Of a stretch of 64,000 bases of DNA, positions 19,571-64,000 are shown one piece after another. Source of the DNA: Phyllobates terribilis (lineage: Eukaryota); NCBI RefSeq assembly GCF_046119375.1, contig NW_027362769.1, forward strand, positions 89,776,001 through 89,840,000, given 5' to 3'. Position 1 is the stretch's first letter; every line of letters begins with the position of its first letter. The notes beneath the pieces are model-generated. The model saw nothing but the letters and a program-made list of their open reading frames with translations. It did not search any database and was not told the origin of the DNA. The position numbers were made by a program, and so were the translations under genes.

Positions 19571-20200
19571 TAAAGGCCCCGTCACACTAAGCGATGCAGC
19601 AGCGATCCCGACAACGATACGACCTGTCAGGGATCGTTGCTGCATCGCTAATACATCGCTGGTGAGATGTCAAACAGGCAGGCTCACCAGCGATCAGGGG
19701 AGCAGCGATATTGTGGAAAGAATCGTTCCACGATGTCCTGCTCCAGTTACCAGCCTGCTGCAAGCAGGAGCAGGCTGGTAACTATGGTAAACATCGGGTT
19801 ACTAAGTGCGCGTGTGCCCCTAGTAACCCGCTGTTTACCATGGATACCACTCTGCTACGGTGCGCGGGAGCCTCCGAGCACCGTAGCAGAGTGGTATCCA
19901 TGGTAAACAGCGGGTTACTAAGTGCGCGCGTGCCCCTAGTAACCCGATGTTTACCATAGTTACCAGCCAGATCGTTGGTCCCGCTGGTCACACACAGCGA
20001 TGTGTGCTGGCCAGCGGGAGGCCAACGACCAAAAAATGGTCCAGGACACTTTGCAGCGATCAGCGACCTCACAGCAGGGGCCTGATCGTTGCAAAGTGTC
20101 ACACACAGCGACATCGCTGGTGAGGTCGCTAGTGAGTCACCAAAACCGTGACACAGCAGCGATATCGCTAGCGATATCGCTATGTGAGACGGGGGCTTAA
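19571..20200. mobile_element. Palindromic MITE with internal tandem repeats
   Basis: aaggccccgtcacact ... tgtgagacgggggcttaa. Confidence 0.8.
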
Positions 20201-20645
20201 GACTTGCAAAAAAGATAACTTACAGTCAGGACATTATCAAAATCCTCCTTGGTACTGTTATTAAAGGAACTCATCCCAAGACTAATGATTCCAATACTGC
20301 ATTCAACTAGTAATGGTGAATTAGGCAATTATCTGGGACGCAAATTCTGTAGGTATACAAGCACAGAATCATAGAGTTAGCTCATACCGTCATGTCCTAT
20401 AATTGATTTTTTTTTTTTAGCTTAGTTACACAGTGCCATTAATTCCACAGCACTTTACAGACATGATCATTGCTGTCCCCAATGGGGCTCACAATCTAGA
20501 TTTCCTATCAATATGTCTTTGGAGTGTGGGAGGAAACCGAAGAAAATCCATGCAAGCACGGGGAGAACATGCAAACAAGTAATTGTATATATTCAAGCGC
20601 AGCTTTCTTTGCCATCCCTGCACCTCATGACATGGAAGTGATATA

Positions 20646-22210
20646 CACTGCTCAAAAAAATAAAGGGAACACTTAAACAACAGAATATAACTCATAGTAA
20701 ATCAAACTGTCCACTTAGGAAGCAACACTGATTGACAATCAATTTCACATGCTGTTGTGCAAATGGAATAGACAATAGATGGAAATTATTGGCAATTATC
20801 AAGACACCCTCAATAAAGGAGTGGTTCTGCAGGTGGGGACCACAGACCACATCTCAGTACCAATGCTTTCTGGCTGATGTTTTGGTCACTTTTGAATGTT
20901 GGTTGTGCTTTCACACTCGTGGTAGCATGAGACAGACTCTACAACCCACAGAAGTTGCTCAGGTAGTGCAGCTCATCCAGGATGGCACATCAATGCGAGC
21001 TGTGGCAAGAAGGTTTGCTGTGTCTGTCAGTGTAGTGTCCAGAGGCTGGAGGCGCTACCAGGAGACAGGCCAGTACACCAGGAGACGTGGAGGGGGCCGT
21101 AGGATGGCAACCATCCAGCAGCAGGACCACTACCTCCGCCTTTGTGCAAGGAGGAACTGGAGGAGCACTGCCAGAGCCCTGCAAAATGACCTCCAGCAGG
21201 CCACAAATGTGCATGTGTCTGCACAAATGGTTAGAAACCGACTCCATGAGGGTGGTATGAGGGCCCGACGTCCACAGATGGGGGTTGTGCTCACAGCCCA
21301 ACACCGTGCAGGACGCTTGGCATTTGCCACAGAACACCAGGATTGGCAAAGTCGCCACTGGCGCCCTGTGCTCTTCACAGATGAAAGCAGGTTCACACTG
21401 AGCACATGTGACAGACGTGACAGAGTCTGGAGATGCTGTGGAGAGTGATCTGAGGTCTGCAACATCCTTCAGCATGACCGGTTTTGCAGTGGGTCAGTAA
21501 TGATGTGGGGTGGCATTTCTTTGGAGGGCCGCACAGCCCTCCATGTGCTCGCCAGAGGTAGCCTGACTGCCATTAGGTACAGAGATGAGATCCTCAGACC
21601 CCTTGTGAGACCATATGCTGGTGCGGTTGGCCCTGGGTTCCTCCTAATTTAGGGCAATGCCAGACCTCATGTGGCTGGAGTGTGTCAGCAGTTCCTGCAA
21701 GATGAAGGCATTGAAGCTATGGACTGGCCCACCCGTTCCCCAGACCTGAATCCGAATGAGCACATCTGGGACATCATGTCTCGCTCCATCCACCAACGTC
21801 ACGTTGCACCACAGACTGTCCAGGAGTTGGTGGATGCTTTAGTCCAGGTCTGGGAGGAGATCCCACAGGAGACCATCCGCAACCTCATTAGGAGCATGCC
21901 CAGGCGTTGTAGGGAGGTCATACAGGCACGTGGAGGCCACACACAATACTGAGCCTCATTTTGACTTGTTTTAAGGACTTTACATCAAAGTTGGATCAGC
22001 CTGTAGTGTGTTTTTCCACTTTAATTTTGGGGGTGACTCCAAATCCAGGCCTCCATTGGTTAATAAATTTGATTTCCATTGATGATTTTTGTGTGATTTT
22101 GTTGTCAGCACATTCAACTTTGTACAGAACAAAGTATTCAATGAGAATATTTCATTCATTCAGATCTAGGATGTGTTATTTGAGTGTTCCCTTTATTTTT
22201 TTGAGCAGTG
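20646..22210 (+). mobile_element. Tc1 DNA transposon, full length (1565 bp), 28-bp TIRs, inserted 2 nt after the YBEY stop codon
   Basis: TA|CACTGCTCAAAAAAATAAAGGGAACACT ... AGTGTTCCCTTTATTTTTTTGAGCAGTG|CA. Confidence 0.95.
20927..21952 (+). pseudogene. Tc1 DD34E transposase pseudogene
   Basis: [27 protein letters not shown]; TGA at 21446-21448; QDNA motif mutated to TAG-GGC-AAT. Confidence 0.9.
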
Positions 22211-22212
22211 CA

Positions 22213-22308
22213 TTATTCTTGGTCATAATGCTCTGAAGTCAGTGGCGTAAGTGCAGATCCAGAAGCTCGGTTTATCGCCATTAGAACTTCACTTTCCTTC
22301 TCAAACAT
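22213..22308 (-). CDS. YBEY: YBEY last coding exon (MFEKESEVLMAINRASGSALTPLTSEHYDQE*)
   Basis: ttaacag acceptor; resembles the mammalian MFQKEK...LQPLT C-terminus; TAA stop. Confidence 0.9.
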   Translation of the reverse strand: MFEKESEVLMAINRASGSALTPLTSEHYDQE

Positions 22309-25285
22309 CTGTTAAAGTGAACAAATGATATGAAAACAATTAGCATTTATTAATGTAGATTAATCCTAAATATCTAAAACCTTGGGTCAACTTTTATATT
22401 AGTGATCCTTTATAAAAAAAAAACCTAATATAGGGAGCACAGACACTACAGGTATCCCCAGAGGCCAGAAGACCTTTCTTCAACAGTTCCAAAATAAAAG
22501 CAGAATTATAAATGCCACATATTTGTGGAGCAGCGGCAGGTGTCTAAGGGGTAACAATGCTCCTTGTGGAGAGTGACAAGCAAAGCCTGGCATATCAGAG
22601 TGAGGAGACTTATAAGCCATGCATGCTCCTCTGGGAAATTAAACACACCCCTGGCATGGTCACACCACTGGTCTGAACTGTGCTCTCTTCCGTGTTGTTA
22701 GTAGAGGCAGGTCTGCCTCTGTAGCATGGAAGGGCAGGGGACACAGAAGCCGACCGGATGCAGCAATCCTACCAACTTCAGAGCGGTGCTTCCAAGTTGT
22801 ATAACAGAATCTTTAATCTTGTCTACGAAACCAGCCACTAAGGTGGCAATTTTGCAATTTTGACCATTAGCAAACGTGACAACCTGTTTAAAGGATCACT
22901 CTCTTTATTAATGGGTAAAATTGTAAAAACAAGCAACATTGCACTTCGCTTTCATAAGAGCGGAGAGGATTTTTCATTTTTTGTTTACTGCTTGTTGTCT
23001 GGTTTACTGACCACGGCTACATGTGTCACGGCTGTTCGATAGCTGGGACACATGCAGGGATTGCCTAACAAACAGGCAATCCCTGCATGTGTCACAACTG
23101 TCTAACAGCCGTGACACATGCAGCCACGGTAACTCAAACATAGATGCTGAGCACACCGAAAATACTCGGCGAGCACCCGAGCGTGCTCGATTAAAGGGTT
23201 AAACGAGCACGCTCGCTCAACACTACTTACAACCTCTAACAGCTCCTGATCCAACCAACTTCAGAGTAACTGCGCTCCTCAAATGCTGTGGAGGCAGAGC
23301 TGCTTCTGCTTGTAGCATCGGAGCACACAGTTTGGGCCAGAGGCAGGACTATGTCACTAGTCTGTACTGTCAATCAAGCAGTAGTGCACTGCCCCCATCA
23401 AGCTGGAAGCCAGGAAAGCAGTGAGCTCCAGAAGAATGAACATGACACAACCCCCTTTGTCTGGAAGCACTGGAGATCTGTAAAAGGGCTCAAACCAGTG
23501 GTTTTCCTTTAAAAGTAACCGTCACTATATTCATGCTGCTTGAACAAAGAGCAGCATGAATCAGATGCTGGCTGCACAATTGCAATCAGGTTATCTTTTA
23601 CTGTGAACTGCTGCGGTATTTTAGGGAAAACATTGTTTTAAAGCTGTCCGGTGACTATAGGGAGAAACCTAGCTCGTCAGGTGCAGTTCCTGGCCGGCTT
23701 CTCCCCGTGCAGCTCTTGTTGATTAACAGGTCTCTCCCAATGTACATACATAGAACAGACCTGTCAATCAACTGGAGCGCTGCAAAGGGAAGCCGGCCGG
23801 GGACTGCACCAGATGAGTCATTTCTCTTTCTACAATCACTAGAAGGCCTTTCAAACTATGTTCTCTCTGAAACATCCGAGTGTCTGAAAGTAAGGGTCGA
23901 ATTCATGCTTCTTGTGGCAGATTCCCTATAAAAAAAATAATACTGCAAATGTAAGCCATGACTATATACTCATGTAAAGCGAAAAGCTGTGTAATATCAG
24001 CACAATCTTAATTTAAAAAAAAAACAAAACTAACCTTTCTCCAGTCGTCTGGACTATGATGAGTATAACCAAGCAGGTGACATAAGCCGTGTACTGCCGT
24101 CACCTGGGGGAAAAGTAATTTATATTTTAGTCTTCCGGCAGTAGAAATACTTTATAAATATTCACTGGACGGAACAAGACCATAAAATGTAACCTCTATA
24201 TGTGACCAACCAGGTATAGGACAGATTCACTTATTACACGTACTTGTGGAGCAGATACTAGCGATTGTAGATCGCTACTCTGAGTGAGGACACAACTCAA
24301 CACATTCTTGAAGAATAATTAGAACAAGTAAGAAATCCTCATTTTTTTTTTACTTTTTAACAAATTTTCTACAAGCTCTTATCCAACTCAGCTCAGATCC
24401 TTTTTCTATGTCGTACTTCACAACAACCAACCTTTGAGCTCCAGAGAATTGTTGTTGATAGCACGTTAACACCATAAGATTTGCATTCTCTATAACTAAC
24501 TTACAGTCAAGACATTGTTAAAATCCTCCTTCTTTTCTTCACACTGGTGATACATAAACTCTACTCCAAGGTAAATGTCTCCTAAATTGTATTCATCCGG
24601 GAATGGTGGATCAGGCAATAATCCGGGACACAAATTCTGGAAGTATATAAGGAGTTCATGCTCTCAGATGCAGCGAACACATATTATATTGGAATTACTT
24701 AAAGAGGAGCCATCACCAGGTTAAAAGTGGCTTGTATTTAGTTTTTTTTTAATCCGCCATATGGTTCCAGATATATGGGCCTTTTTAGCTAATGGTCATT
24801 TTGATGGTGTGGCTCACAAGGTCAGGATCCTCGGGGGCATGTCTTTAGAATGCTCTGCATTATTACCCTGTGAGCCACACCCTCTTGTAAAGACTACAAA
24901 AATTAGTACTGAATAAAAAGGTCCACATCTCTGAAACTGTATGGCGGATTTTAAAAAAAAAAGCAAAAAACAGAGTACTTAGATGTGCAGCGGAAATAAA
25001 GTCAGAGCAAAAAGTGGTCCCTTTTTACCCGGTGACAGGCTCCTTTCAAGACAACCATCATTGCCATTTGTGTACCTCATGAAATGGAAATGACAACACG
25101 TCTGTAGCTTTGTCTTTTCGTCTGTAACGTTTGTTCAGTTGTCGAATCTTTGTATCATTTATACATATTACCCCAACATCAAACCTCTTCACACCCAGAC
25201 AGCTTCTGGCAATTTCTAGATTCTTGCGTAAATGGGCTCTGCGAAGAGGGATCACATGCTGCAGGTTCCGTATGAGAAGAGACAT
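22213..25285 (-). CDS. YBEY: Endoribonuclease YbeY, complete CDS in 4 coding exons (168 aa)
   Basis: MSLLIRNLQHVIPLRRA...TDVLSFPFHE, LGDIYLG and the metal-binding HGLCHLLGYTH motif; phases are continuous; ends in TAA at 22213-22215. Confidence 0.96.
23509..23931. mobile_element. TTAA-type MITE in the last YBEY intron
   Basis: Internal inverted arms gtgcagttcctggccggcttc / gaagccggccggggactgcac. Confidence 0.65.
24035..24103 (-). CDS. YBEY: YBEY coding exon 3 (VTAVHGLCHLLGYTHHSPDDWRK)
   Basis: ccccag/gttagt junctions, 69 nt, H-x3-H-x5-H motif. Confidence 0.96.
24505..24636 (-). CDS. YBEY: YBEY coding exon 2 (NLCPGLLPDPPFPDEYNLGDIYLGVEF...NVLT)
   Basis: ttccag/gtaagt junctions, 132 nt. Confidence 0.95.
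24699..25049. mobile_element. TTAA-type MITE filling most of a YBEY intron; related copy at about 6240-6600
   Basis: ttaaagaggagccatcacc ... ggtgacaggctcctttcaa; aatccgccata...ctgtatggcgga shared with 6308-6515. Confidence 0.7.
25076..25285 (-). CDS. YBEY: YBEY coding exon 1 (MSLLIRN...SFPFHE)
   Basis: Acceptor caacag then GGTG then ATG; donor gtacac; 210 coding nt. Confidence 0.95.
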
Positions 25286-38600: not shown

Positions 38601-41600
38601 CTAGAAAACATGGTTCGCCTCCTCTTTTTCCATGATACGGAGGAAGCTGCAGATTTTCTTATATCCTATGGCTTAAGTGTTAGTGAAGGGTAAGTGTGCC
38701 TTAGAGCGGCAATCTCTGGAATATACTGTATTAATTATCCTTTATACTTACTGTGTTTTTTTTTTTTTTTTCCCCTACTGAAAGTTGTGTAGAGCTGAAT
38801 CGTACTGCATATGTTGAGCCGTTGATTCCTTTTCAGCCAAAGAGGAGCTCCTATATCAGTTCTAAGCAGCAAAAGTCTGTAGGGGAGGTTGTGAATGGAG
38901 CCCCACTCCCACAGTTTTCTTTGCATATGCCTGTTTGCAGCTTTGATGGCCAGAATAAATATACTGGAAGTTTTAGCATTTATGAACCAGGAATAACAAC
39001 AGGTAAGTAAAAAATGAACTTAAAAATAAACAAAACTTTGTGTCATGGTTCTCAGTCAGCGTTAACAAGTTGGTGTTTCTCATTAATAGCATTGGGGGAC
39101 GCAGCACATGCCACTAGGAGGCTGACAAAAGGCAGAAAAAAAAAAGTGCTGGCTCCGACAGGTCTGCTGTATCCTCCCATCGGACACTAGGCAGCTCTGT
39201 TTTAGCATAGTCTCTTTGGAGCATTTTACCCACTTCTTGTCCTAGTCTGCAGAGATCTTCATTGTTGATTCTGCCCCCACTTTGCTCCAAGGCTAGTCTT
39301 TTTTTCATTGGCTGGTGCTGACATCCAACACCAGTCTCTTGGGTTTAGGAACGTTGTTCTCACATCATAACTCTGAGTCTCTCGTTCTCCTGGAACTATG
39401 AGGACTTTTTTCTAGCCCTCTCCCTCTGGTACGCACCGTATACTAAACCACAGTAGTTTATGGTAGTTTATTATGGTTACATCATGGAGGTCACTGGGAA
39501 TTCCTTTTATGTGTTAGTAGCCACGGGTGTTTGTCCAAAAGAAGAAGTCTCTAAGTCTATTGTCTTCGCACTTCACAACTGGGCTGCATATTTTTCATCT
39601 GAGAATCTGTAGCTACAGGGGGACTGGCCCCATCTGGAGATTTTACACCATTTCTCTTTTTGGTGGAAGACTCCTGACTCGAGTCTCTTCTTGTCGTGGC
39701 TCCATCCCAGCCTGTCCGCCTGTTCTCTGGACACCATGATCTTCACTGTGAACGTACTGGTCGTCCCTTGCGGAGAGTTTTGTCTCCTCTATTTGTTCTC
39801 CAGCTGGCCAATGCATATCTAATTCCAGTTATCCTTAGTACTTAGTGATAGTCTCACCAAGCCTAGCATTCTGACCTGGTTCTTCTGGTCACTGTTGCTC
39901 CTTGGCCTCTTCCTTTTTGCCTGAACTGTCTTCTCAGGATCCCCTATTCCACCCCTTCTAAGTTTTTTGGCTTGGTTGTGAATCTAGAGATTTTAAGCCC
40001 ATAAACTTCAGTTTGTAAAGGTTTATCTCTGTACTTAGGATTCTTACTACCCTTGGTAGAAGAAACCAGGTTTTTACTTTCTTAAAATGTTTCACTCTCA
40101 ATATCTTGTAGCGAGCTGTGAAAGACAATGCTTCAGCCCCTTTACTTTTGTAGGACATGTTTTTGCCCTTTACACCCTCTTTTAGAGATCCAGACCACCT
40201 GCGAGCAGGTCTAGACTTGCTCAGGGGATGGTCGCTTTGTGCCACGCTACCAGAGTATTCTGGAACTCTTAAATCTCCTCCTATTCTGATTGTGTTAGAA
40301 ATTTTATTTCCAGCGCTTCTGCTGTGTTTTTTTCACAGACTGATTTCGAGGAGGATCACCTTTTGATCATCACCACTATTCCCAGGATCTCTGTTAGTTG
40401 TAGGCGCCTGTAGTAGATCTATCTTCCTTATTTTCCATTAGGACAGGATGGTTTACTGCTCTTTCTTCCATTCACTTCAATAAGTATATTATCCTTAGCT
40501 CCTTGGTCCCTTCCCCTTTTCATTTTCTGGAGTGTTCCTTGCAACGTTTGGTTTTCTCTATCGCTTTATTGGGGGACACAGGAAACCATGGGTGTATGCT
40601 GCTGCCACTGGTTTTATCATGGCTACTAGTATCATTCTATCCGTTACAGAAGCTCGCCATAGTTTTGACTCTCTTTTCGTAATCTCTTTCTCAAAGATTA
40701 GCTTTTTTCTAGTGGTTTTGGACTGTGATTTTGGACGTTTACAGCGCCAGGAGTAGAGCTGCTTCCTTTTGCATTTATCTCATCCGACAAGAGTGGTCAG
40801 TAGATATGATCGAACAAAATCTCCAGTGGCCAGTTGAGTATTCTGTGGTTGCTGGATGTGATTTCTGCAAATCACCACATATCTGACGACATCCACAGCT
40901 CCTCCTTTGATTGGGCGTTCTGACGTCACGTCATGTGTACATCATGCTGCAACAATGATGTCATGACAGGCCAGCTAATCAAGCGGAGTCAGAGATTCTG
41001 GCAGATAGGAGGCCGTTTTGCAGGGTTCCTGCCTGGCAACCATCAGGGTTCCGCAAATTGATTTGCTCATCTCTAGTGGTCAGGTTTCTGGCTTCCATTC
41101 CCTTGGTTGGCAAGGCTGCCACCTAGGCCGCAATTTGCATCTTTGCCCAGTTCTTTCTAGGTTCTCATCATGACCTTGGGTCAAGATGCGGCAAGTCCGT
41201 GCACTTGGTGATCCGCATGGTCAGTTTTTTGGTATTGCCCACCCTCTGGGACTGCGCTAGGATGTCCCATGGTGTTATGTCCTCCTGTGCTATTAATGAG
41301 AAAATTTGATTTTTGTATTTAATGTAAAATCTTTTTTTCCTGAAAGAGGTTTTCCCACGATCAAAAGTTAATTTTAATCAACACATCTTGGAATAATAAT
41401 AACTTCCACAATTGGATGTGATGAAATAAAATGTTCCTGTGCTGAGATAATCTTATAAATGTGCCCCTGCTGTGTACTGTGTAATGACCCTGCACAGTCA
41501 GACACAGCCATTACACAGTACACAGCAGGGGCACATTTATAAGATTATCTCAGCACAGGAACATTTTATTTCATCACATCCAATTGTGGAAGATATTATT

Positions 41601-44600
41601 ATTCCAAGATCTATTGATAAAAAATCAACTTTTATTCATGGGAAAACCCCTTTAAATACATTAGAGGACACAGATCCCACCCTATTTTTGTTTCTCTTTT
41701 CCATTGTCAATTCCCATGGTAATTGTTCTCTTTCCTGAGTTCAGGTCATGTTGGTTCCTGGTTGCTAGATTATTTTGATCCTTTCCTCTCCTAGTGCTTT
41801 TGGCTCAAAAATGAGGAGAGGGTATAGCCCACCTGGCAGAACCTAGAACCTAGAGCCAGCACTTATTTCTACCTAGTGATGGCCTCCTAGTAAAGGGCCT
41901 ATACCCTTTATTTATATATTATTAGATCTAGGTTGTCCTTGATTTGTACATTTTAATTTAGATTTTTACTTAACTTGTTTCTATATCAACAGAAAAACCT
42001 GCTCTTGAAGAAATTAAATGTACTACTGTACTGTCATTGCCTGATGCTAAGGAGTCCAGTTCTGTGCCTGCGCAGGCAGTCTTTCTGCCCATCCTGCCTC
42101 CTGAACCACCACCGTCTCCTCCCAAGCCAAAATTCAATGACGAGGTACTAAAAAAGATAAATGCCATACTATACTGGTGGTTTAAATAATTTCACATTTG
42201 GAAAATTGCAGATCAGACAGAAAATGTGGTCTTTCCTAGGCAGCCCTGTTTTCAGAAGAAATCTGCTGGGTTCAAACATATATTTAAGGCCAAGTTCACA
42301 CCAAAGCTGAGATTTCTTTTCACTCATAACCACTAATTGCAGACATCACTGCATCCGTGTGACCCTCCATGCACTTGCAATCAGTGAATTTTGGAAGCAA
42401 TGATGATTTTTTTTTATCATATTTGGCTAATGTGTATAGGCACTTTAAAACTGACTTTTTTATAGTATTGTCTTTTGATGTTTTATGCAGGATGTGGCTC
42501 ATGTCCTGGAAGATATTTTGGAGGATGCTGTGAAAGAACTGAGCGCTCCTGTCATCCAAAGTGTGACAGAATACATCTCAACTGCACTTGGGTATAACTT
42601 TATTTTCTCTTTAATGCTTAATAGGATATATATCAGTTGCAAGCAAAAGAAAATTAGCACAATTGTTTAGTTGATGACATTAAGTGATGGGACCTATTTA
42701 ATTCCAAATAATACTACAATGAATATATTCAAATCATTTTCATGGACAGGGTTTTTTCTAATTATATGAATAATTATCATTCTCATTAAAATCTTTTTTT
42801 TTTTTTTTCTTGTATTGCTTAAGTGAGTCGTCTATAGTTGCCGATCAGCTGCTGGCAGATCTTGTACTGAATTTTTCTAGAAATGTTGCAGAAGAAGAAA
42901 TAAAGGCTGAGATTGAAAGAGTGAAAGAGGAAAAACGAAGGAAGGCAGAGGAAACCAGGTAAGAAGTGTCTTTTTTCACATTGTCCTTATATCATGTTGA
43001 CAGTATTTGAGAATTTAAGAAATTACATAATCTGATCTTACAAATTTTACAACAGGAGGATTCAAGAAAGAGAGCGACTCCTTTCGTTGGAGACCCAGTC
43101 TCAATGTGCTGATCTCATAAATGACGTAGTCAGAGAGAATGTCCAGAAAATATGCAAAAAAGAGCTCCAGTAAGTGCTTTCAGGAATTGTTTTGTCAGCA
43201 TGCTAATGCCCTTAATACATGCCCCTGATACAAAATGTGCTCTCTAATATTTAATACTTAAAAAGCATAATTCTAGCCAAGCAAAAAACCAAAACGAGTT
43301 TAAATACATAATAAAAAGTATTTATCAATTTATTAATAATGTATCTTTCTTTATCGCCTCATTGGGGGACACAGGTAAACATGGGAATAAAAAGTATCAA
43401 TTTATTAATAATGCATCTTTTTGGGATATTTTATCTGCTTAAAGGTTCCTTTATTTTTATCTTTAGTTTATATTATTTAAAGGGGTTGTCTTATGCTCAT
43501 AAATTAGCATAATTGCTTTAAATAAAAACAAACAACTCTGCAATTTACCCCTCATTAAAAATCCACTCCATTCTAAAGAACAAAGGGCTTTTTAATTGTA
43601 TAGTATACAGCTCGTTGCATAGGTTACCAGCCACCTTGCAATTTTAGAGTGGCCGGTTACCTAGGCAAAGAACGCGTGGCATAAGCTAGCTCTATGCTTT
43701 ACAGCTTGCAAGAGCTGCTCTGAAGCTGCCGAGGTCTCTGGATCTAACCAGCCCCTGTCCCCCTGCGCTTCTATACTGCAGAGTTAAAGCTGCCTCTACT
43801 TCCACCCTAGAAGATGGCACAAATCAGACCAGCAGCGTGACCGTGCTCCAAACTTATCAGTCTTCAGGAGTGTGCTGCTCCTGGCAAAGCAGGAACGGTG
43901 CACTCTTGAAGATTCTTTAGACAACCCCTTTAAGGCCCTATACACAATATTATTAGCCAAGATAACCATTATCAGCAGGATCGGACAATCTAAATCTTCC
44001 CTCTTTGATTATGATTTCTTTGTTTCAGGAAAGCCGTGCAGCTTGACCACAACGAGCGCATTTTACGCTGCTCTAAGCTTGTCTGTGACCAGCATGTTAG
44101 GCGATTTGTGGATGAGGAGATCTTCCATACAGCCAGAGAAACCCTTCATGAGATGCAATGTTGCAGCAAATATATTCAGAGGTTGGGTGTTTTTCATTTG
44201 CAAAGCTAATTTGCAAACTTTTCCTGTAATATCTCAGTAGTAATATTGTCCTGTGTTTTCAGATGGCGGGAAGTTTTAGCTGCACGTAAGAAATTGAGAC
44301 GACAAATGCGCGCCTTTCCAGCAGCACCCGGTTCTGTGGGCTGTGATGGTAAACTGAAAGCTTTGATTCCCAGTGCGGATACCCACGATGTACAGAACTT
44401 GTCTAAAGGAATTGTTAACTTGGGGCATTCTGGAAGATTAAGTGTTTCCTTTACAAGGTGGGCTCATTGGTCTTTTAGTGCAAAAAAAACAACAAACAAA
44501 ATCAAACCCACCCTTAGACTTTGTTGCATAATGATCAGTGAAATTGTAGAAAACTCCTTCTTGTTATTCATTCATCTACAGTATATACAGATAGTTCATT

Positions 44601-59600: not shown

Positions 59601-62600
59601 GACAGCAGTGTGAGCATCCTTTTCTTACCTCATTAACCCTGTTTATCTCCAGTATTAGATCAGATAGACAGGGTGCACAGCAGTGTGAGCAGCCTCTTCT
59701 TACCTCATTAACCCTGGTATCTCCAGTATTAGATCAGATAGGGTGGGCAGCAGTGTGAGTAGCCTCTTATACCTTATACCTCAGCACCCCTGGTATCTCT
59801 AGTATTACAACCAAATGTCCTCTGTGAGCACATCTCCCTACACATGAAGTGAGGTGGTGTAGCACATACTCAGTCACCTCTTCTGTTTTTATTGTAGGAC
59901 AGGTTTCTGTCAGTGTAACTAGATAAGTCAATTTAATGTACTATAATGACAATCCAAGTGTAATTTGCTAATTATATGTACAGCATTTAGGAATTTATTT
60001 TTAATCCTTCCCAGAAAACCTTTTTTAAGAAATGTAAAATCTTCATAGTTTCCAAAGTAATTTTTCATGGCTTTACTTTTTAATACATGCATCTCTTAGT
60101 ATGTTTTTCTTCTGAAGGCGGTACATGGCCCTCTGACTGAGAATGAGTTGGAGCAGGTTGAAATCCAAAAGCAGTTTCTGGGAACAAGTGGTATAGTTCT
60201 CCTGTTACCAGTGCAGTCAGATGCAGATGTATATCGGATCGCAGCTCTACTGCAGCTGAAGCAGCTACTTCAAGCTAAACCCTTTAAGCCTTCCCCAACT
60301 CTTGCAGTTCTGGTACCTTCAACTTACACAGATCCAGAGACAATAATAGAAAAAGGTAAGTCTAGACCAGTATGAATCATATTGATGAGTTTGAATAGCC
60401 ACTTTCAGCAAACTTTGCATATATAAATAGTATAGACAAATTTAAGAAACTTTAATTAGAGTTGAGCAAATAAATTTGCAGGATCCTGCTACAGTGGCCA
60501 CGTGTAAGGTTTGTAGCCGCCGGACCAGAGCACTGCAAATCTACTACATGCGACACTCCTGGGGCCTTTTTTGATTAGCAGGCTTTTGCAACTTCATTAC
60601 TTTGCCACACATGACGTCACTGCAGTTTACTAATCAGAAGAGGCACCAGGGATCTCGCAGGTAGTAGAAAGTTCACGACTCTTTAGTCCAGCAGCAACGG
60701 ACTACTGACATGATCACTGGACCAGGGTTGTGCGAATGTTTTTGGGCAACTTTTTTTTTTTTTTACAATCTTAGGAAAAAAATTATGTTTCTTTCTCCAC
60801 TTATGAGCCACTTCTCCTTTTTCTCCTCCTCCTTCCCTCCCTTCTCCTTTCTCCCTCCTCCTCTCATCATACAGTCTGAAAAATGGCTAAAATCTGTCCT
60901 TTTCAAAATAATACTGACAAGGCTGCTCACTGAAGTATCAGATTATAGCTGTCTATGGAAGTCTATGGAGAGGAGGGCATAATCAGAGAACAGGCAGAGA
61001 GAGACACGGACAGACGATGTTGCTGCTTTCTGATAAGTGGTATACTGTACCTAAACCTAGAATTTCACACTGCTCGATACTGCGGTATAAGTTTCTCCAT
61101 ACTGCTGCTACTTTGTCTGACTGCCACAGAAAGGAAAGCAGGAACCCCTCATGTCTTTATGTGCTGTATATGAGATATCATAGCTGCTAGTCTCTCTTCA
61201 CTAGCTAAGAGGCAACTGAAAATGAGAGAGTGCCTGCACATAAAGCTAGAACTGTAATGTACCCACATGACAGCTTATTCTTATGACTAATGTGGAACTC
61301 ATTTGTAGACCTTTTTGTTTGCCTGCTTTCTACATTATTGTTCATAAATACACTGTGTTCCAAATTATTATGCAAATAATATTTTCTCCGATTTTCCCAA
61401 ATTACCTATATGAATTGCAGTCATTGTAATTTTCCAGTCAAATAACTATTAGAGTACAATTGAAAGGTTTTTGTACAAACTGCCTATGATAACAGTATAT
61501 TTAAAAAAAAAAAAAAACTCAAACTGCACTCAAAATGCATGTTCCAAATTATTATGCACAGCAGAGTTTTCAACCTTTTCATTTTAATAAAGAACAAAAA
61601 AATGGTCATTTTTGAAATTATAAGCATTAGCAGGTTATTATAAACTGAAATCAAACAGTTTTCAACTCAAAACTTTATTCTAGGTGATGTTACATTTGCA
61701 CATAGGACCACTTGTTCGAAAGGAGCTTCTGAACTCTCTCGTCCATTGAATTTGTCAGGTTTTGGATGGTTTCTGCTTCAATTGTTTTGCATGAGGACAG
61801 AATACCCTCCCAGAGCTGTTGCTTAGATGTGAACTGCCTCCCGCCATCATAGACACTCCTTTTGATGATGTTCCAGAGGTTCTCAATGGGGTTGAGGTCA
61901 GGGGAGCATGGGGGCCACACCATAAGTTTGTCCCCTTTTATGCCCACAGCAGCCAGAGATGCAGATGTGTTATGTGCAGCATGAGACGGGGCATTATCAT
62001 GCATGAAAATGATCTTGCTGCGGAATGCACGGTTCTTCTTCTTGAACCATGGCAGGAAATGCCGATGGAGAAACTCAACATACATTATAGAGTTCATGTT
62101 GAGTTTCTCCATCGGCATTTTCTGCCATGGTTCAAGAAGAAGAACCGTGCATTCCGCAGCAAGATCATTTTCATGCATGATAATGCCCCGTCTCATGCTG
62201 CACATAACACATCTGTATCTCTGGCTGCTGTGGGCATAAATGGGGACAAACTTATGGTGTGGCACCCATGCTCCCCTGACCTCAACCCCATTGAGAACCT
62301 CTGGAGCATCATCAAAAGGAGTGTCTATGATGGCGGGAGGCAGTTCACATCTAAGCAACAGCTCTGGGAGGGTATTCTGTCCTCATGCAAAACAATTGAA
62401 GCCGAAACCATCCAAAACCTGACAAATTCAATGGACGAGAGAGTTCAGAAGCTCCTTTCGAACAAGCGGTCCTATGTGCAAATGTAACATCACCTAGAAT
62501 AAAGTTTTGAGTTGAAAACTGGTTGATTTCAGTTTGTAATAACCTGCTAATGCTTATAATTTCAAAAATGAACATTTTTATGTTCTTTATTAAAATGAAA

Positions 62601-62977
62601 AGGTAGAAAACTCTGCTGTGCATAATAATTTGGAACATGCATTTTGAGTGCAGTTTGAGTTTTTTATTTTTTTAAAAATATACTGTTATCATAGGCAGTT
62701 TGTACAAAAACCTTTCAATTGTACTCTAATAGTTATTTGACTGGAAAATTACAATGACTGCAATTCATATAGGTAATTTGGGAAAATCTGAGAAAATATT
62801 ATTTGCATAATAATTTGGAACACAGTGTAGACATTTATAGGACCTTATTATCACAGTCATGTCTTTTGTTTTATTTCAGAACTTAATATTTCAGACTTGG
62901 TGTCATGTGGACTAATATCAGATTATAAGGTTTTCGCCTTACCTGATGGTGTGAATGACATGAGAGGAACAAACATG
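30198..62977 (+). CDS. MCM3AP: Germinal-center associated nuclear protein (GANP; TREX-2 scaffold), 22 coding exons in window (5724 nt, 1908 codons); continues right of the window
   Basis: FG-repeat N-terminus, RRM-like exon and SAC3/GANP domain ([39 protein letters not shown]); all exons join GT-AG in continuous phase. Confidence 0.96.
32716..32903. other. Assembly gap (188 N) in the intron after MCM3AP coding exon 1
   Basis: Run of N. Confidence 0.99.
33224..33447 (+). CDS. MCM3AP: MCM3AP coding exon 2 (RRM-like: [12 protein letters not shown]...VHIQYSNH)
   Basis: ctccag/gtgagt junctions, 224 nt. Confidence 0.93.
34384..34462 (+). CDS. MCM3AP: MCM3AP coding exon 3 ([26 protein letters not shown])
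   Basis: ttacag/gtgagt junctions, 79 nt. Confidence 0.92.
34704..34818 (+). CDS. MCM3AP: MCM3AP coding exon 4
   Basis: tttcag/gtaatt junctions, 115 nt, phase-compatible with neighbours. Confidence 0.85.
34898..35088 (+). CDS. MCM3AP: MCM3AP coding exon 5 (...[24 protein letters not shown])
   Basis: ttttag/gtattc junctions, 191 nt. Confidence 0.94.
35231..35370 (+). CDS. MCM3AP: MCM3AP coding exon 6 (SAC3/GANP start: [15 protein letters not shown])
   Basis: ttatag/gtaatt junctions, 140 nt. Confidence 0.96.
35530..35727 (+). CDS. MCM3AP: MCM3AP coding exon 7 ([17 protein letters not shown]...WNRTRGIRK)
   Basis: tcaaag/gtgaga junctions, 198 nt. Confidence 0.96.
36297..36565 (+). CDS. MCM3AP: MCM3AP coding exon 8 (DITQQDLC...[10 protein letters not shown])
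   Basis: ttttag/gtaaaa junctions, 269 nt. Confidence 0.96.
36837..37728. mobile_element. TTAA-flanked palindromic MITE (about 890 bp)
   Basis: ttaaaggggttgtctgatacctataat ... attataggtatcggacaagacaatcctttaa. Confidence 0.75.
38274..38436 (+). CDS. MCM3AP: MCM3AP coding exon 9 ([10 protein letters not shown]...LHCYFPQ)
   Basis: cttcag/gtaata junctions, 163 nt. Confidence 0.95.
38529..38689 (+). CDS. MCM3AP: MCM3AP coding exon 10 ([14 protein letters not shown]...GLSVSE)
   Basis: tcgcag/gtaagt junctions, 161 nt. Confidence 0.95.
38785..39002 (+). CDS. MCM3AP: MCM3AP coding exon 11 ([12 protein letters not shown]...[11 protein letters not shown]...)
   Basis: tgaaag/gtaagt junctions, 218 nt. 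Confidence 0.93.
39076..41340 (+). mobile_element. Heavily decayed DIRS-like retrotransposon in the intron after MCM3AP coding exon 11
   Basis: Left terminus tttctcattaatagcattggggga; its complement tgctattaatgagaaa recurs ICR-like near 41287-41302; YR remnant (KAAT*) near 41113; a second DIRS left terminus is nested at 40553. Confidence 0.65.
41341..41655. mobile_element. TTAA-type MITE; partial related copy at about 51840-52073
   Basis: gaggttttcccacga ... tcatgggaaaacccctttaa; acagcaggggcacatttataagattatctcagcacaggaaca is shared. Confidence 0.75.
41993..42144 (+). CDS. MCM3AP: MCM3AP coding exon 12 (KPALEEIK...PPKPKFNDE)
   Basis: caacag/gtacta junctions, 152 nt, open and phase-compatible. 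Confidence 0.88.
42491..42591 (+). CDS. MCM3AP: MCM3AP coding exon 13 ([17 protein letters not shown]...)
   Basis: atgcag/gtataa junctions, 101 nt. Confidence 0.9.
42824..42958 (+). CDS. MCM3AP: MCM3AP coding exon 14 ([10 protein letters not shown]...[10 protein letters not shown])
   Basis: cttaag/gtaaga junctions, 135 nt. Confidence 0.9.
43056..43169 (+). CDS. MCM3AP: MCM3AP coding exon 15 (RIQERERLL...ICKKEL)
   Basis: caacag/gtaagt junctions, 114 nt. Confidence 0.9.
43346..43385 (+). mobile_element. Isolated 40-bp DIRS left terminus
   Basis: tttctttatcgcctcattgggggacacagg...catggg closely matches 53018-53055. Confidence 0.7.
43477..43933. mobile_element. TTAA-flanked MITE
   Basis: ttaaaggggttgtct ... 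agacaacccctttaa. Confidence 0.7.
44029..44181 (+). CDS. MCM3AP: MCM3AP coding exon 16 ([15 protein letters not shown]...CSKYIQ)
   Basis: tttcag/gttggg junctions, 153 nt. Confidence 0.92.
44263..44457 (+). CDS. MCM3AP: MCM3AP coding exon 17 ([22 protein letters not shown]...)
   Basis: tttcag/gtgggc junctions, 195 nt. Confidence 0.94.
44661..44729 (+). CDS. MCM3AP: MCM3AP coding exon 18 ([22 protein letters not shown])
   Basis: ctccag/gtttgt junctions, 69 nt. Confidence 0.92.
44851..45838 (-). repeat. 3' LTR (988 bp)
   Basis: By eye it matches the 5' LTR except for 45-bp and 30-bp indels and about 3-4 substitutions. Confidence 0.95.
45884..49090 (-). pseudogene. Chromovirus Pol (protease, RT, RNase H, integrase, chromodomain), reached by -1 frameshift; in-frame TAG at 47915-47917 and a frameshift near the C-terminus
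   Basis: [57 protein letters not shown], and chromodomain FEVENIL...[17 protein letters not shown]. Confidence 0.93.
49078..50028 (-). CDS. Chromovirus Gag (316 aa) with CCHC zinc knuckle
   Basis: Intact ORF; [15 protein letters not shown] and [14 protein letters not shown]; ends at a G GGA AAC slippery site. Confidence 0.93.
50042..51104 (-). repeat. 5' LTR (1063 bp) with CCAAT (50905-50909), TATATAA (50880-50886) and 45-bp and about 99-bp internal tandem repeats
   Basis: Direct repeat of 44851-45838. Confidence 0.95.
52489..52617 (+). CDS. MCM3AP: MCM3AP coding exon 19 ([18 protein letters not shown]...FWKVVIALP)
   Basis: atacag/gtaagt junctions, 129 nt. Confidence 0.93.
52698..52845 (+). 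CDS. MCM3AP: MCM3AP coding exon 20 ([10 protein letters not shown]...VNVCVK)
   Basis: ttgcag/gtgagg junctions, 148 nt. Confidence 0.93.
53806..55700 (+). pseudogene. DIRS ORF1 (gag-like), frameshifted
   Basis: CxxC...CxxC motif; [41 protein letters not shown]. Confidence 0.75.
55700..57560 (+). pseudogene. DIRS ORF2: reverse transcriptase, RNase H and Dam-like methyltransferase domain, disrupted
   Basis: [39 protein letters not shown]; TGA at 56740-56742; [18 protein letters not shown]; DVDLMAS...YLFPP...VAPDWP. Confidence 0.88.
57551..58609 (+). pseudogene. DIRS tyrosine recombinase, disrupted
   Basis: TSIRRVAEL (R), AHSTR (HxxR), RFY (Y, after the frameshift); TAG at 57850-57852, +1 frameshift near 58441 and a further TAG. 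Confidence 0.88.
59256..59800 (+). repeat. Minisatellite, about 65-bp unit (ggacagcagtgtgagcagcctcttcttacctca...ggtatctccagtattagatcagata), about 8 copies
   Basis: Directly visible degenerate tandem copies. Confidence 0.9.
60118..60355 (+). CDS. MCM3AP: MCM3AP coding exon 21 ([13 protein letters not shown]...[12 protein letters not shown]...)
   Basis: ctgaag/gtaagt junctions, 238 nt. Confidence 0.93.
61351..62827. mobile_element. Palindromic (fold-back) Tc1 derivative, 1477 bp: two inverted copies of the 3' half of a Tc1
   Basis: TA|CACTGTGTTCCAAATTATTATGC ... GCATAATAATTTGGAACACAGTG|TA; arms 61351-62081 and 62096-62827 with a 14-nt spacer; both strands encode MHDNAPSH...[11 protein letters not shown]. 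Confidence 0.93.
62880..62977 (+). CDS. MCM3AP: MCM3AP coding exon 22 ([15 protein letters not shown]...NDMRGTNM)
   Basis: tttcag/gtaaga junctions, 98 nt. Confidence 0.9.
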
Positions 62978-64000
62978 GTAAGATTTGTAGTATTAAATAA
63001 GTATATCAATACATTTCATGTATAGCATATTAGACATGCTGTGACACAATCGTAAAGTGCCATTGGGTTATTGTGGTTTCCTGAGCCTACTGGAGGTCTC
63101 TACGTCTGCCACAAACCTCCAAATCATTGCCTTCAGTGGTCATGCCTTGGTAGATGACACAAGACTGCTGAGGTTAAGGATTGGTTGCAGTGGTCACGCA
63201 TTGTTGACGGAATGAAATTGCTGCAGCCATATCAATGAATAAACTCCATGGAGTAATGTGGAGGCGGCAAAATTTTCATTTTTTTTATTCTCAAATATTA
63301 GTTGCCTTTGTCCCAATTTTTTTTTTTTTAAGCAATTGCTAAAATGATAGTACCTGCAATTCAGTGATTGCAGGTTCAAATCCACCAGAAACCTTTTTTT
63401 ACATCCCATTAAAAAAAAAAAGCATTTGTACCCCTAAATGGGACCAATTAAAACACAAAAAAAACCCCACATAAAACAATCTTTATATTTTAACAACAAG
63501 AAAAGAAATTTTCCTGACAGGCCAATACATAACTGACCCCTCCAACTCAAAATACTTAACACCTACAAAGAGCTACTAAGAGTCATAGGAGGTCAAAGAC
63601 CCCAATTTAAATAAAACATGAATTTTATTGAATCTTAAACAACCATTTAAAAGACATATTATAGAGCCCTGCTCAGTAGCATAGGCACAAATAAGGGAAA
63701 ATTACAAGTAATACAGAAGTATCAGTAAGGCTCACAGAGAAAGGCTTATTGGAAGACTAATAGGTGATACATTGTTATAACATCATAGTAAGAGAGGAGA
63801 AAGGAGGAGATTTTTTATACCCAAAGCACCCTGAAAAACCTTGGTCTTGCTGCCCAGTGAACATCAATGTAGATATATAGTTAAGTTATGTAAAATGAAT
63901 TAGCCAGCACCAAGGTCCTCATAGTTGTATAGGGCCACATGAATAATCTCATCAAGAGACCACACTATCCATAAATATCCTCTCCTTTAATGTAATAAAC

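What the first reader, a model, noticed from the sequence alone, without database searches (positions are those of the whole stretch)
61351..62827. A 1.48-kb palindromic Tc1 derivative that appears to have transposed as a unit
Seen: the element is two inverted copies (731 and 732 bp) of the 3' half of a Tc1, each with the C-terminal transposase (second D, E and C-terminus) and the right TIR, joined by a 14-nt spacer (62082-62095). Only the left arm keeps the original [10 protein letters not shown] sequence, which points to a fold-back. Symmetry stops exactly at the TIR ends plus TA, and the flanks are unrelated. Inference: the fold-back arose elsewhere and was mobilised in trans, capturing the birth of a long-TIR MITE-like family from an autonomous element. 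In MCM3AP pre-mRNA it would form a stem of about 730 bp ending 52 nt upstream of the exon-22 acceptor.
Basis: partly seen in the sequence, partly recalled or inferred. Interest (0 to 1): 0.72.

Follow-up and report, generated by a model that had tools for sequence, protein, structure and literature searches.

The report
Palindromic dead Tc1 transposon in intron
A 1.48-kb near-perfect palindrome in an intron of the frog MCM3AP/GANP gene is a dead Tc1 transposon made of two mirror copies of the element's right half; the structure is real and its breakpoints can be read to the base, but it is a known kind of by-product and nothing here shows that it ever jumped as a unit.

Summary
Window 61351-62827 is an inverted duplication with arms of 731 and 732 bp. 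The arms are 98% identical, are separated by a 14-nt spacer, and are bounded by TA on both sides, with unrelated flanks.

Each arm carries a complete right-hand IR/DR terminal repeat, the 3' UTR and residues about 202-337 of a 337-aa Tc1 transposase. A full-length relative (L001, 94% nt identity) places the breakpoints at canonical positions 838/840 and 854. The spacer is canonical sequence 840-853, and the only junction microhomology is AT. This is the signature of a single snap-back or template-switch event.

Using L001 and L002 as outgroups, the 16 arm differences split about 9 to 7. The arms were therefore identical at birth and have since diverged about 2%. The element is old, not a birth caught in the act.

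The left and right termini share 26 nt, so abortive gap repair at this very site gives the same product.

Copy number, the empty site and read support could not be tested.

The scan has four other unchecked first-reader notes of "two inverted 3' halves" Tc1 derivatives on other DNA of this genome. I rate this a new member of a known kind, of modest interest.

The parts
61349..61350 (.). TA dinucleotide flanking the left terminus (target-site duplication of Tc1/mariner type)
   Evidence: Read directly from the sequence. The inverted repeat extends through TA and stops there.
61351..62081 (-). Left arm: reverse complement of canonical element positions 854-1584. With the spacer it is colinear with the canonical element back to about position 838/840.
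   Evidence: blastn against L001: palindrome positions 1-750 match L001 1584-835 at 94%. Junction read.
61351..61580 (-). Right-type IR/DR terminal repeat at the left end, with the outer DR core at 61356-61374 and the inner DR core at 61540-61558
   Evidence: I3/I4. The 184-nt outer-to-inner spacing is the same as in L001.
61690..62097 (-). Truncated transposase ORF (residues about 202-337 of 337: second D, E and C-terminus, plus stop codon)
   Evidence: Translation. Pfam DDE_3, E=1.8e-13. 90% identical to P0002 residues 199-337.
62082..62095 (-). 14-nt spacer, which is canonical positions 840-853 and is the loop of the fold-back. The AT on each side of it (62080-81 and 62096-97) is the junction microhomology.
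62096..62827 (+). Right arm: canonical element positions 854-1584
   Evidence: blastn: palindrome positions 746-1477 match L001 854-1584 at 93.6%.
62098..62487 (+). Second truncated transposase copy (VEFL... to the stop codon)
   Evidence: Pfam DDE_3, E=2e-10. ORF list.
62598..62827 (+). Right-type IR/DR terminal repeat at the right end, with the inner DR core at 62619-62637 and the outer DR core at 62804-62822
62828..62829 (.). TA dinucleotide flanking the right terminus
60118..60355 (+). Upstream host exon of MCM3AP/GANP. The start is approximate; the donor GT is at 60356.
   Evidence: Pfam MCM3AP_GANP (PF16769), E=2.6e-23, profile positions 168-248. Donor read.
62880..62977 (+). Downstream host exon of MCM3AP/GANP. 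The acceptor AG is at 62878-79 and the donor GT at 62978.
   Evidence: Pfam MCM3AP_GANP, E=2.8e-06, 26.3 bits against a cut-off of 25, profile positions 257-290. Sequence.

Best explanation
The element is a dead, non-autonomous derivative of an IR/DR-type Tc1 transposon, created by one fold-back event during repair synthesis. A strand being copied inward from the element's right end stopped at about canonical position 838. It paired back on itself 14 nt upstream through a 2-nt AT match, or switched to the complementary strand, and was then copied back out to the right terminus. The outermost 26 nt of the right terminus are the exact inverted copy of the left terminus. The returning strand could therefore anneal to the other side of the excision gap, which leaves TA, two right ends and untouched flanks. 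The simplest history is that a normal Tc1 once sat at this TA in the MCM3AP intron and was converted in place by abortive gap repair after an excision attempt. The two arms then decayed independently by about 1% each. Shown here: the structure, the breakpoints, the microhomology, the polarity of the arm differences and the host context. Inferred: the repair mechanism and the place of birth. The fold-back origin itself I hold at about 0.85; the in-place birth at about 0.5, which is the confidence given for this entry.
For: The arms and spacer are confirmed. Comparison with the full-length relative L001 puts the left arm at canonical 838/840-1584 and the right arm at 854-1584, and shows that the spacer is canonical sequence. 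Two independent truncations would fall within 16 nt of each other in a 1580-bp element only about 2% of the time (my estimate). The left and right termini of L001 are identical for 26 nt and then diverge, and both ends of the palindrome are right-type beyond nt 26. The 16 arm differences split about 9 derived in the right arm and about 7 in the left. A further 20 of 704 sites are shared by both arms against both outgroups, so the arms come from one source copy. Published model: template switching through the TIR during abortive gap repair explains the inversely duplicated subterminal sequence of the Goblin MITE, and many Tc1/mariner MITEs are whole fold-backs (PMC3814204). Fold-back inversions in yeast form through single-stranded DNA hairpins (abstract of PMC7467729, as listed). 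Tc1 makes up about 7% of this species' reads, so a prior ordinary insertion at this site is unremarkable (PMC12208295).
Against: No trace of a left-end sequence remains at the locus, so a former full-length copy here is assumed rather than seen. A 2-nt microhomology is weak and fits plain end joining equally well. Converting a self-paired hairpin strand into a linear duplex needs unwinding and a 26-nt annealing step that I cannot show. Four other unchecked notes of similar palindromes in this genome could mean that such elements are mobile families.
Confidence: 0.5

Rival explanations
1. The palindrome arose at another locus and was then cut out at its two right-type IR/DR ends by transposase supplied in trans. 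It was pasted as a unit into this TA, making it one member, or the founder, of a long-TIR non-autonomous family.
For: The termini are intact, TA lies on both sides and the flanks are unrelated. All four transposase-binding repeats are perfect and keep the canonical 184-nt spacing. About 1.06 kb separates the inner repeats, well above the more than 400 bp seen between the IR/DRs of truncated Tdr1 copies (PMC5224488). In L001 the right-end inner repeat is a better match to the core than the left-end one, 0 against 2 mismatches. Other notes in the same genome describe similar palindromes, two of them with the same length of 1569 (unchecked).
Against: No second copy has been seen. No protein in the 5.8-billion-cluster collection spans the junction, and the junction is absent from metagenome contigs; neither collection seems to hold this frog, so both blanks are weak. 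This history needs one more event than in-place birth. IR/DR transposases mobilise shortened substrates poorly in Sleeping Beauty assays. Long palindromes are poor and unstable substrates in general (my own knowledge).
Confidence: 0.38
2. Two separate Tc1 copies inserted head to head, or one into the other, and a later deletion removed both 5' parts.
For: The genome is packed with Tc1: three other Tc1-like elements lie in this window alone. The 2% arm divergence could in principle be divergence between two source copies.
Against: The two truncation points lie only 14-16 nt apart. The arms share 20 derived sites against both outgroups, and their private differences are balanced. No intervening host sequence or inner TA remains at the centre.
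Confidence: 0.05
3. The palindrome is an assembly artefact, for example a chimeric fold-back long read.
For: Fold-back chimeras are a known error of long-read libraries (my own knowledge). No reads could be laid here.
Against: The symmetry ends exactly at transposon termini plus TA, not at arbitrary points. The arms differ at 16 positions. Unique intron and exon sequence continues on both sides, and no N run lies within 28 kb. Runs from two studies and several samples of the same species hold 0.77-0.86 of the sampled words of the stretch; this is indirect, because the junction itself was not checked.
Confidence: 0.05

Closest known systems
Goblin MITE derived from the Tc1/mariner element Ozma in Aedes aegypti (Yang et al. 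2013, PMC3814204)
   Same: It is a non-autonomous Tc1/mariner derivative whose long TIRs are an inverse duplication of the 3' subterminal region of the parent. Its breakpoints show short microhomology, and it is explained by template switching during abortive gap repair.
   Different: Goblin is miniature (54-bp TIRs), multi-copy and has a 6-bp microhomology. The frog element is 1.48 kb with 731-bp arms that still hold 136 codons of transposase, has a 2-nt microhomology, and its copy number is unknown.
Whole-fold-back Tc1/mariner-type MITEs of C. elegans and others (PALTA1_CE, CeleTc2, CeleTc5, Cele7, Hairpin; listed in PMC3814204) and Tc7 (345-bp TIRs with Tc1 ends; from my own knowledge of Rezsohazy et al. 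1997)
   Same: In these elements too, the element is essentially one long inverted repeat with Tc1-type ends and TA targets.
   Different: Those are short, anonymous inside and proven multi-copy, and their parent sequence can mostly no longer be traced. Here the parent sequence and both breakpoints are readable.
MADE1, the 80-bp palindromic MITE from human Hsmar1 (PMC5224488)
   Same: It is a palindromic derivative of a Tc1/mariner element whose transcripts form hairpins that are processed into small RNAs.
   Different: MADE1 comes from a simple-IR mariner by internal deletion, carries left and right ends, and has thousands of copies. The frog element comes from an IR/DR family, for which MITE-like derivatives are reported to be absent in the Tdr1/Sleeping Beauty work, and it has two right ends.
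Fold-back inversions / inverted duplications formed via single-stranded DNA hairpins (yeast: PMC7467729)
   Same: The junction architecture is the same: two inverted copies meet at a short asymmetric spacer bounded by a very short inverted match.
   Different: Those are chromosome-scale rearrangements. Here the event is confined within a transposon and ends at its termini.
IR/DR-type Tc1 elements (Sleeping Beauty, Tdr1)
   Same: The terminal repeats are about 230 bp long with two transposase-binding direct repeats each, the target is TA, and the transposase has a DDE_3 domain.
   Different: The frog element lacks the left end and the whole N-terminal DNA-binding half with the first catalytic D, so it cannot move itself.

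Membership tests
Tc1/mariner superfamily, IR/DR-type Tc1-like element | TA target-site duplication at both termini | tested here: met
   TA lies at 61349-50 and at 62828-29.
Tc1/mariner superfamily, IR/DR-type Tc1-like element | Terminal repeats of about 230 bp, each with an outer and an inner direct repeat (transposase-binding sites) | tested here: met
   The 19-nt core occurs at 61356, 61540, 62619 and 62804. The spacing matches the full-length relative L001.
Tc1/mariner superfamily, IR/DR-type Tc1-like element | Encodes a DDE/D transposase with an N-terminal paired-like DNA-binding domain | tested here: not met
   Only residues about 202-337 are present, twice. The first D and the HTH domains are missing, so this is a non-autonomous derivative and not a complete member.
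Tc1/mariner superfamily, IR/DR-type Tc1-like element | One left and one right end | tested here: not met
   Both ends are right-type beyond the shared 26 nt.
Fold-back / palindromic MITE-like non-autonomous DNA transposons | The element is essentially one inverted duplication of a single end of the parent | tested here: met
Fold-back / palindromic MITE-like non-autonomous DNA transposons | Miniature size (tens to a few hundred bp) and no coding remnant | tested here: not met
   The element is 1477 bp long and carries two 130-136-codon transposase remnants.
Fold-back / palindromic MITE-like non-autonomous DNA transposons | Multiple copies with the same internal junction in different flanks (evidence of mobilisation) | not testable with these tools
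No tool holds this genome. The blanks are uninformative.

The most novel reading that the evidence does not exclude
This poison-frog genome may hold a recurrent, mobile class of kilobase 'giant hairpin' Tc1 derivatives built from two right halves. That would mean IR/DR-type Tc1 elements, reported not to give rise to MITEs, instead spawn non-autonomous families by fold-back. It would also mean that pairs of right ends are the transposition-competent form, and that intronic copies like this one feed long double-stranded RNA into host pre-mRNAs.
Probability: 0.22. Interest if true: 0.5.

Novelty: new member of a known kind. Interest (0 to 1): 0.33.

Why it matters
The origin of long-TIR and fold-back non-autonomous transposons is usually inferred from short, decayed MITEs whose parent is lost. 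In this case both arms still carry recognisable parent sequence and a near-identical full-length relative exists. The fold-back breakpoints, the loop and the microhomology can therefore be read to the base.

A genome-wide count may show many such right-right palindromes with shared junctions. That would bear on a published claim that IR/DR elements do not generate mobilisable short derivatives. It would also identify a source of kilobase dsRNA inside host genes. As a single, old, dead copy of unknown copy number, it is a tidy example rather than a surprise.

Tried and rejected
- **Read evidence:** The look-up of sequencing runs found holders. No read, depth, empty-site or RNA evidence was obtained.
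- **Protein route to other copies:** I searched the protein collection with the 222-aa ORF that spans the junction. All hits cover only the transposase part and none spans the junction. The frog's own contigs appear not to be in that collection, because the best identities are 90-94% and come from fishes.
- **DNA route:** an exact search for the 34-nt junction in metagenome contigs gave 0 matches. A search for related loci in the same collection found only distant relatives, 74% at best.
- **Source of L001:** the run accession SRR10079740 appears in no paper.
- **Rfam:** no family matched at 61000-63200.
- **Autointegration:** considered and rejected, because it would place the transposon ends inside the product rather than outside, and there is no TA at the junction.
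- **RNA-mediated (snap-back cDNA) origin:** considered and rejected, because the outer ends are exact TIR termini with TA, with no poly(A) tail or long duplication.
- **Short palindromic MITE-like elements elsewhere in the window:** they have different termini and are not derived from this Tc1.

Full report
**1. Observation**

The region reads as described. The repeat finder reports two adjoining inverted-repeat pairs: 61500-62081/62096-62677 (582 nt, 98%, 14 nt apart) and 61349-61517/62661-62829 (169 nt, 98%). They are one palindrome, interrupted only by a 1-nt indel in a T run.

Aligning the reverse complement of the left arm with the right arm gives 15 substitutions and 1 indel over 731/732 nt. 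Similarity ends immediately outside TA on both sides. The element is therefore 61351-62827 (1477 bp), with TA at 61349-50 and 62828-29, and the flanks are unrelated.

No N run lies nearer than 32903.

**2. Anatomy**

- Each arm contains the 19-nt core TGTTCCAAATTATTATGCA twice, 184 nt apart. That makes four exact copies in the 64-kb window against 0.02 expected. This is the outer and inner direct-repeat layout of IR/DR-type Tc1 elements.
- Each arm also holds the 3' UTR and the C-terminal part of a DDE_3 transposase (Pfam PF13358, E=1.8e-13 and 2e-10, profile positions 63-145 of 146).
- On the minus strand the left arm reads [14 protein letters not shown]... to the stop codon. The right arm matches only from VEFL.
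- By symmetry, each strand carries a 222-codon open frame across the centre: an open antisense frame fused to the C-terminal transposase.

**3. Parent element and breakpoints**

A search with the junction-spanning ORF found no protein that spans the junction. It did find close transposases:

- fish proteins from Metynnis hypsauchen (83-94% aa) and Prochilodus (92%);
- a 337-aa protein, P0002, on a 1586-bp Logan contig, L001.

L001 is a complete element (positions 5-1584) with an intact ORF and TA flanks. Its direct-repeat cores lie at 10, 194 (2 mismatches), 1377 and 1561.

blastn places the palindrome's left arm plus spacer on L001 1584-835, and the right arm on L001 854-1584, at 94% nt identity. 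Reading the junction against L001 and against the Metynnis copy L002 gives the following:

- Colinearity of the left arm runs back to canonical position 840, or 838 if the shared AT is counted.
- The right arm starts at 854.
- The 14-nt spacer is canonical 840-853.
- The only unambiguous microhomology is the self-complementary dinucleotide AT. The 5-nt match that blastn extended contains a mismatch in both outgroups.

The break falls at transposase residue about 201/202 of 337. The DNA-binding half and the first catalytic D are therefore missing from both arms.

**4. One event or two copies**

Two independent truncations would fall within 16 nt of each other in a 1580-bp element about 2% of the time (my estimate).

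Using L001 and L002 as outgroups, the arm differences split about 9 derived in the right arm and about 7 in the left. One site is changed in both arms. At 20 of 704 sites the two arms agree with each other against both outgroups.

The arms therefore descend from one source copy, were identical when made, and have since drifted apart by 2.05%. With frog neutral rates of roughly 1-3 x 10^-9 per site per year (my own knowledge, not tested), that is about 3-10 million years. Gene conversion between the arms would make this a minimum. It is not a freshly caught birth.

**5. Mechanism**

The short asymmetric loop bounded by a tiny inverted match is the junction type of fold-back inversions. These form when a 3' single strand pairs back on itself and primes synthesis (abstract of PMC7467729, as listed).

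For Tc1/mariner elements, Yang et al. list many MITEs that are whole fold-backs. They explain the inversely duplicated subterminal sequence of Goblin by template switching through the TIR during abortive gap repair (PMC3814204).

In this family the two termini are identical for 26 nt and differ after that. Both ends of the palindrome are right-type beyond nt 26. A strand that copied the right half inward, folded back at 838/854 and ran back out ends in a sequence complementary to a copy of the left terminus. It can therefore be captured by the other side of an excision gap.

That route yields TA, two right ends and untouched flanks at the original insertion site.

In-place birth needs one event fewer, so I give it 0.5. 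Mobilisation as a unit gets 0.38. Two insertions plus a deletion gets 0.05, and an assembly artefact 0.05.

The following points favour possible mobility:

- All four binding repeats are perfect and keep the canonical spacing.
- About 1.06 kb lies between the inner repeats, above the more than 400 bp always seen between the IR/DRs of truncated Tdr1 copies (PMC5224488).

Against mobility, the same paper reports no Tdr1-derived MITEs and poor mobilisation of shortened Sleeping Beauty substrates.

**6. Host context**

The open segments on either side match Pfam MCM3AP_GANP. The upstream one covers profile positions 168-248 (E=2.6e-23). The downstream one covers 257-290 (E=2.8e-06, 26.3 bits against a cut-off of 25). 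They are therefore successive exons of MCM3AP/GANP on the + strand.

The intron runs from 60356 to 62879, and the palindrome makes up 58% of it. The element ends 52 nt before the acceptor AG. The exon number was not verified.

Folded as RNA, 61345-62835 forms a single hairpin of -1317 kcal/mol. The predicted stem is real as a prediction. Whether it is edited, diced or affects splicing is untested.

Two AATAAA motifs lie on the gene's sense strand, at 61586 and 62498.

**7. What could not be done**

The look-up of sequencing runs showed that runs of the same species, from two studies and several samples, hold 0.49-0.86 of the sampled words. Two other organisms and some probable RNA runs hold about 0.3. 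That figure is about what near-identical Tc1 words alone would give.

There is therefore no read-level confirmation, no junction copy number, no empty site and no RNA evidence. The junction is absent from metagenome contigs, and related loci there are distant. Neither collection is expected to hold this frog. Rfam finds nothing.

**8. Earlier notes of this scan**

These notes are unchecked and serve only as leads. A follow-up on this window names the genome as the golden poison frog.

Four first-reader notes on other DNA of the same genome describe Tc1 derivatives made of two inverted 3' halves. Their lengths are 1256, 1569 and 1569 letters, and one has arms of about 650 bp.

If these notes are real, such palindromes are a recurrent class in this genome. 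Tc1 accounts for about 7% of its reads (PMC12208295). The apparent restriction to 3' halves would also need explaining. I could not examine those loci.

**9. Verdict**

The structure is real and neatly resolved. It belongs to a known kind: fold-back non-autonomous derivatives of Tc1/mariner elements made by template switching in repair. It differs in being kilobase-sized, in still carrying coding remnants, and in coming from an IR/DR family. The claims of transposition as a unit and of a nascent family are open, not shown.

Noticed in passing
window 61351-62827 compared with L001 (Logan contig, SRR10079740) and L002 (Metynnis hypsauchen, GCA_050495845.1, CM115309.1): The frog arms are 93-94% identical at the nucleotide level, including UTR and terminal repeats, to Tc1 copies in a South American characiform fish and to a contig with an intact 337-aa transposase ORF. 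Fish-metagenome RNA runs also hold 8-12% of the words. This points to horizontal transfer between fish and poison frogs, a phenomenon already reported for Oophaga pumilio (PMC6278860).
   Followed up: partly
window 61690-62358 (-) and 61819-62487 (+): Each strand carries a 222-codon ORF across the palindrome centre. About 85 codons of open antisense frame are fused in frame to the C-terminal transposase. No protein in the large collection spans this fusion.
   Followed up: yes
window 41343-41652, 10451-10917, 19768-19973, 13258-13455, 23000-23140: There are five short near-perfect palindromic, MITE-like elements (arms of 67-230 nt, spacers of 6-24 nt). Their termini are unlike this Tc1; two of them start AAAG(A/G)GGTT.
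   Followed up: partly
window 1103-2741, 6680-8247, 20643-22213: Three other Tc1-like elements of about 1.6 kb are present, with ordinary left and right ends, from different families. None shares the direct-repeat core of the palindrome.
   Followed up: partly
window 61586-61591 and 62498-62503: AATAAA motifs lie on the MCM3AP sense strand inside the intronic palindrome. They are possible premature poly(A) signals; this is untested.
   Followed up: no
same genome, other pieces (notes s1-245148, s1-209245, s1-245166, s1-238392): Four first-reader notes describe Tc1 derivatives made of two inverted 3' halves; none describes 5' halves. If this is not a detection bias, the asymmetry is unexplained.
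   Followed up: no
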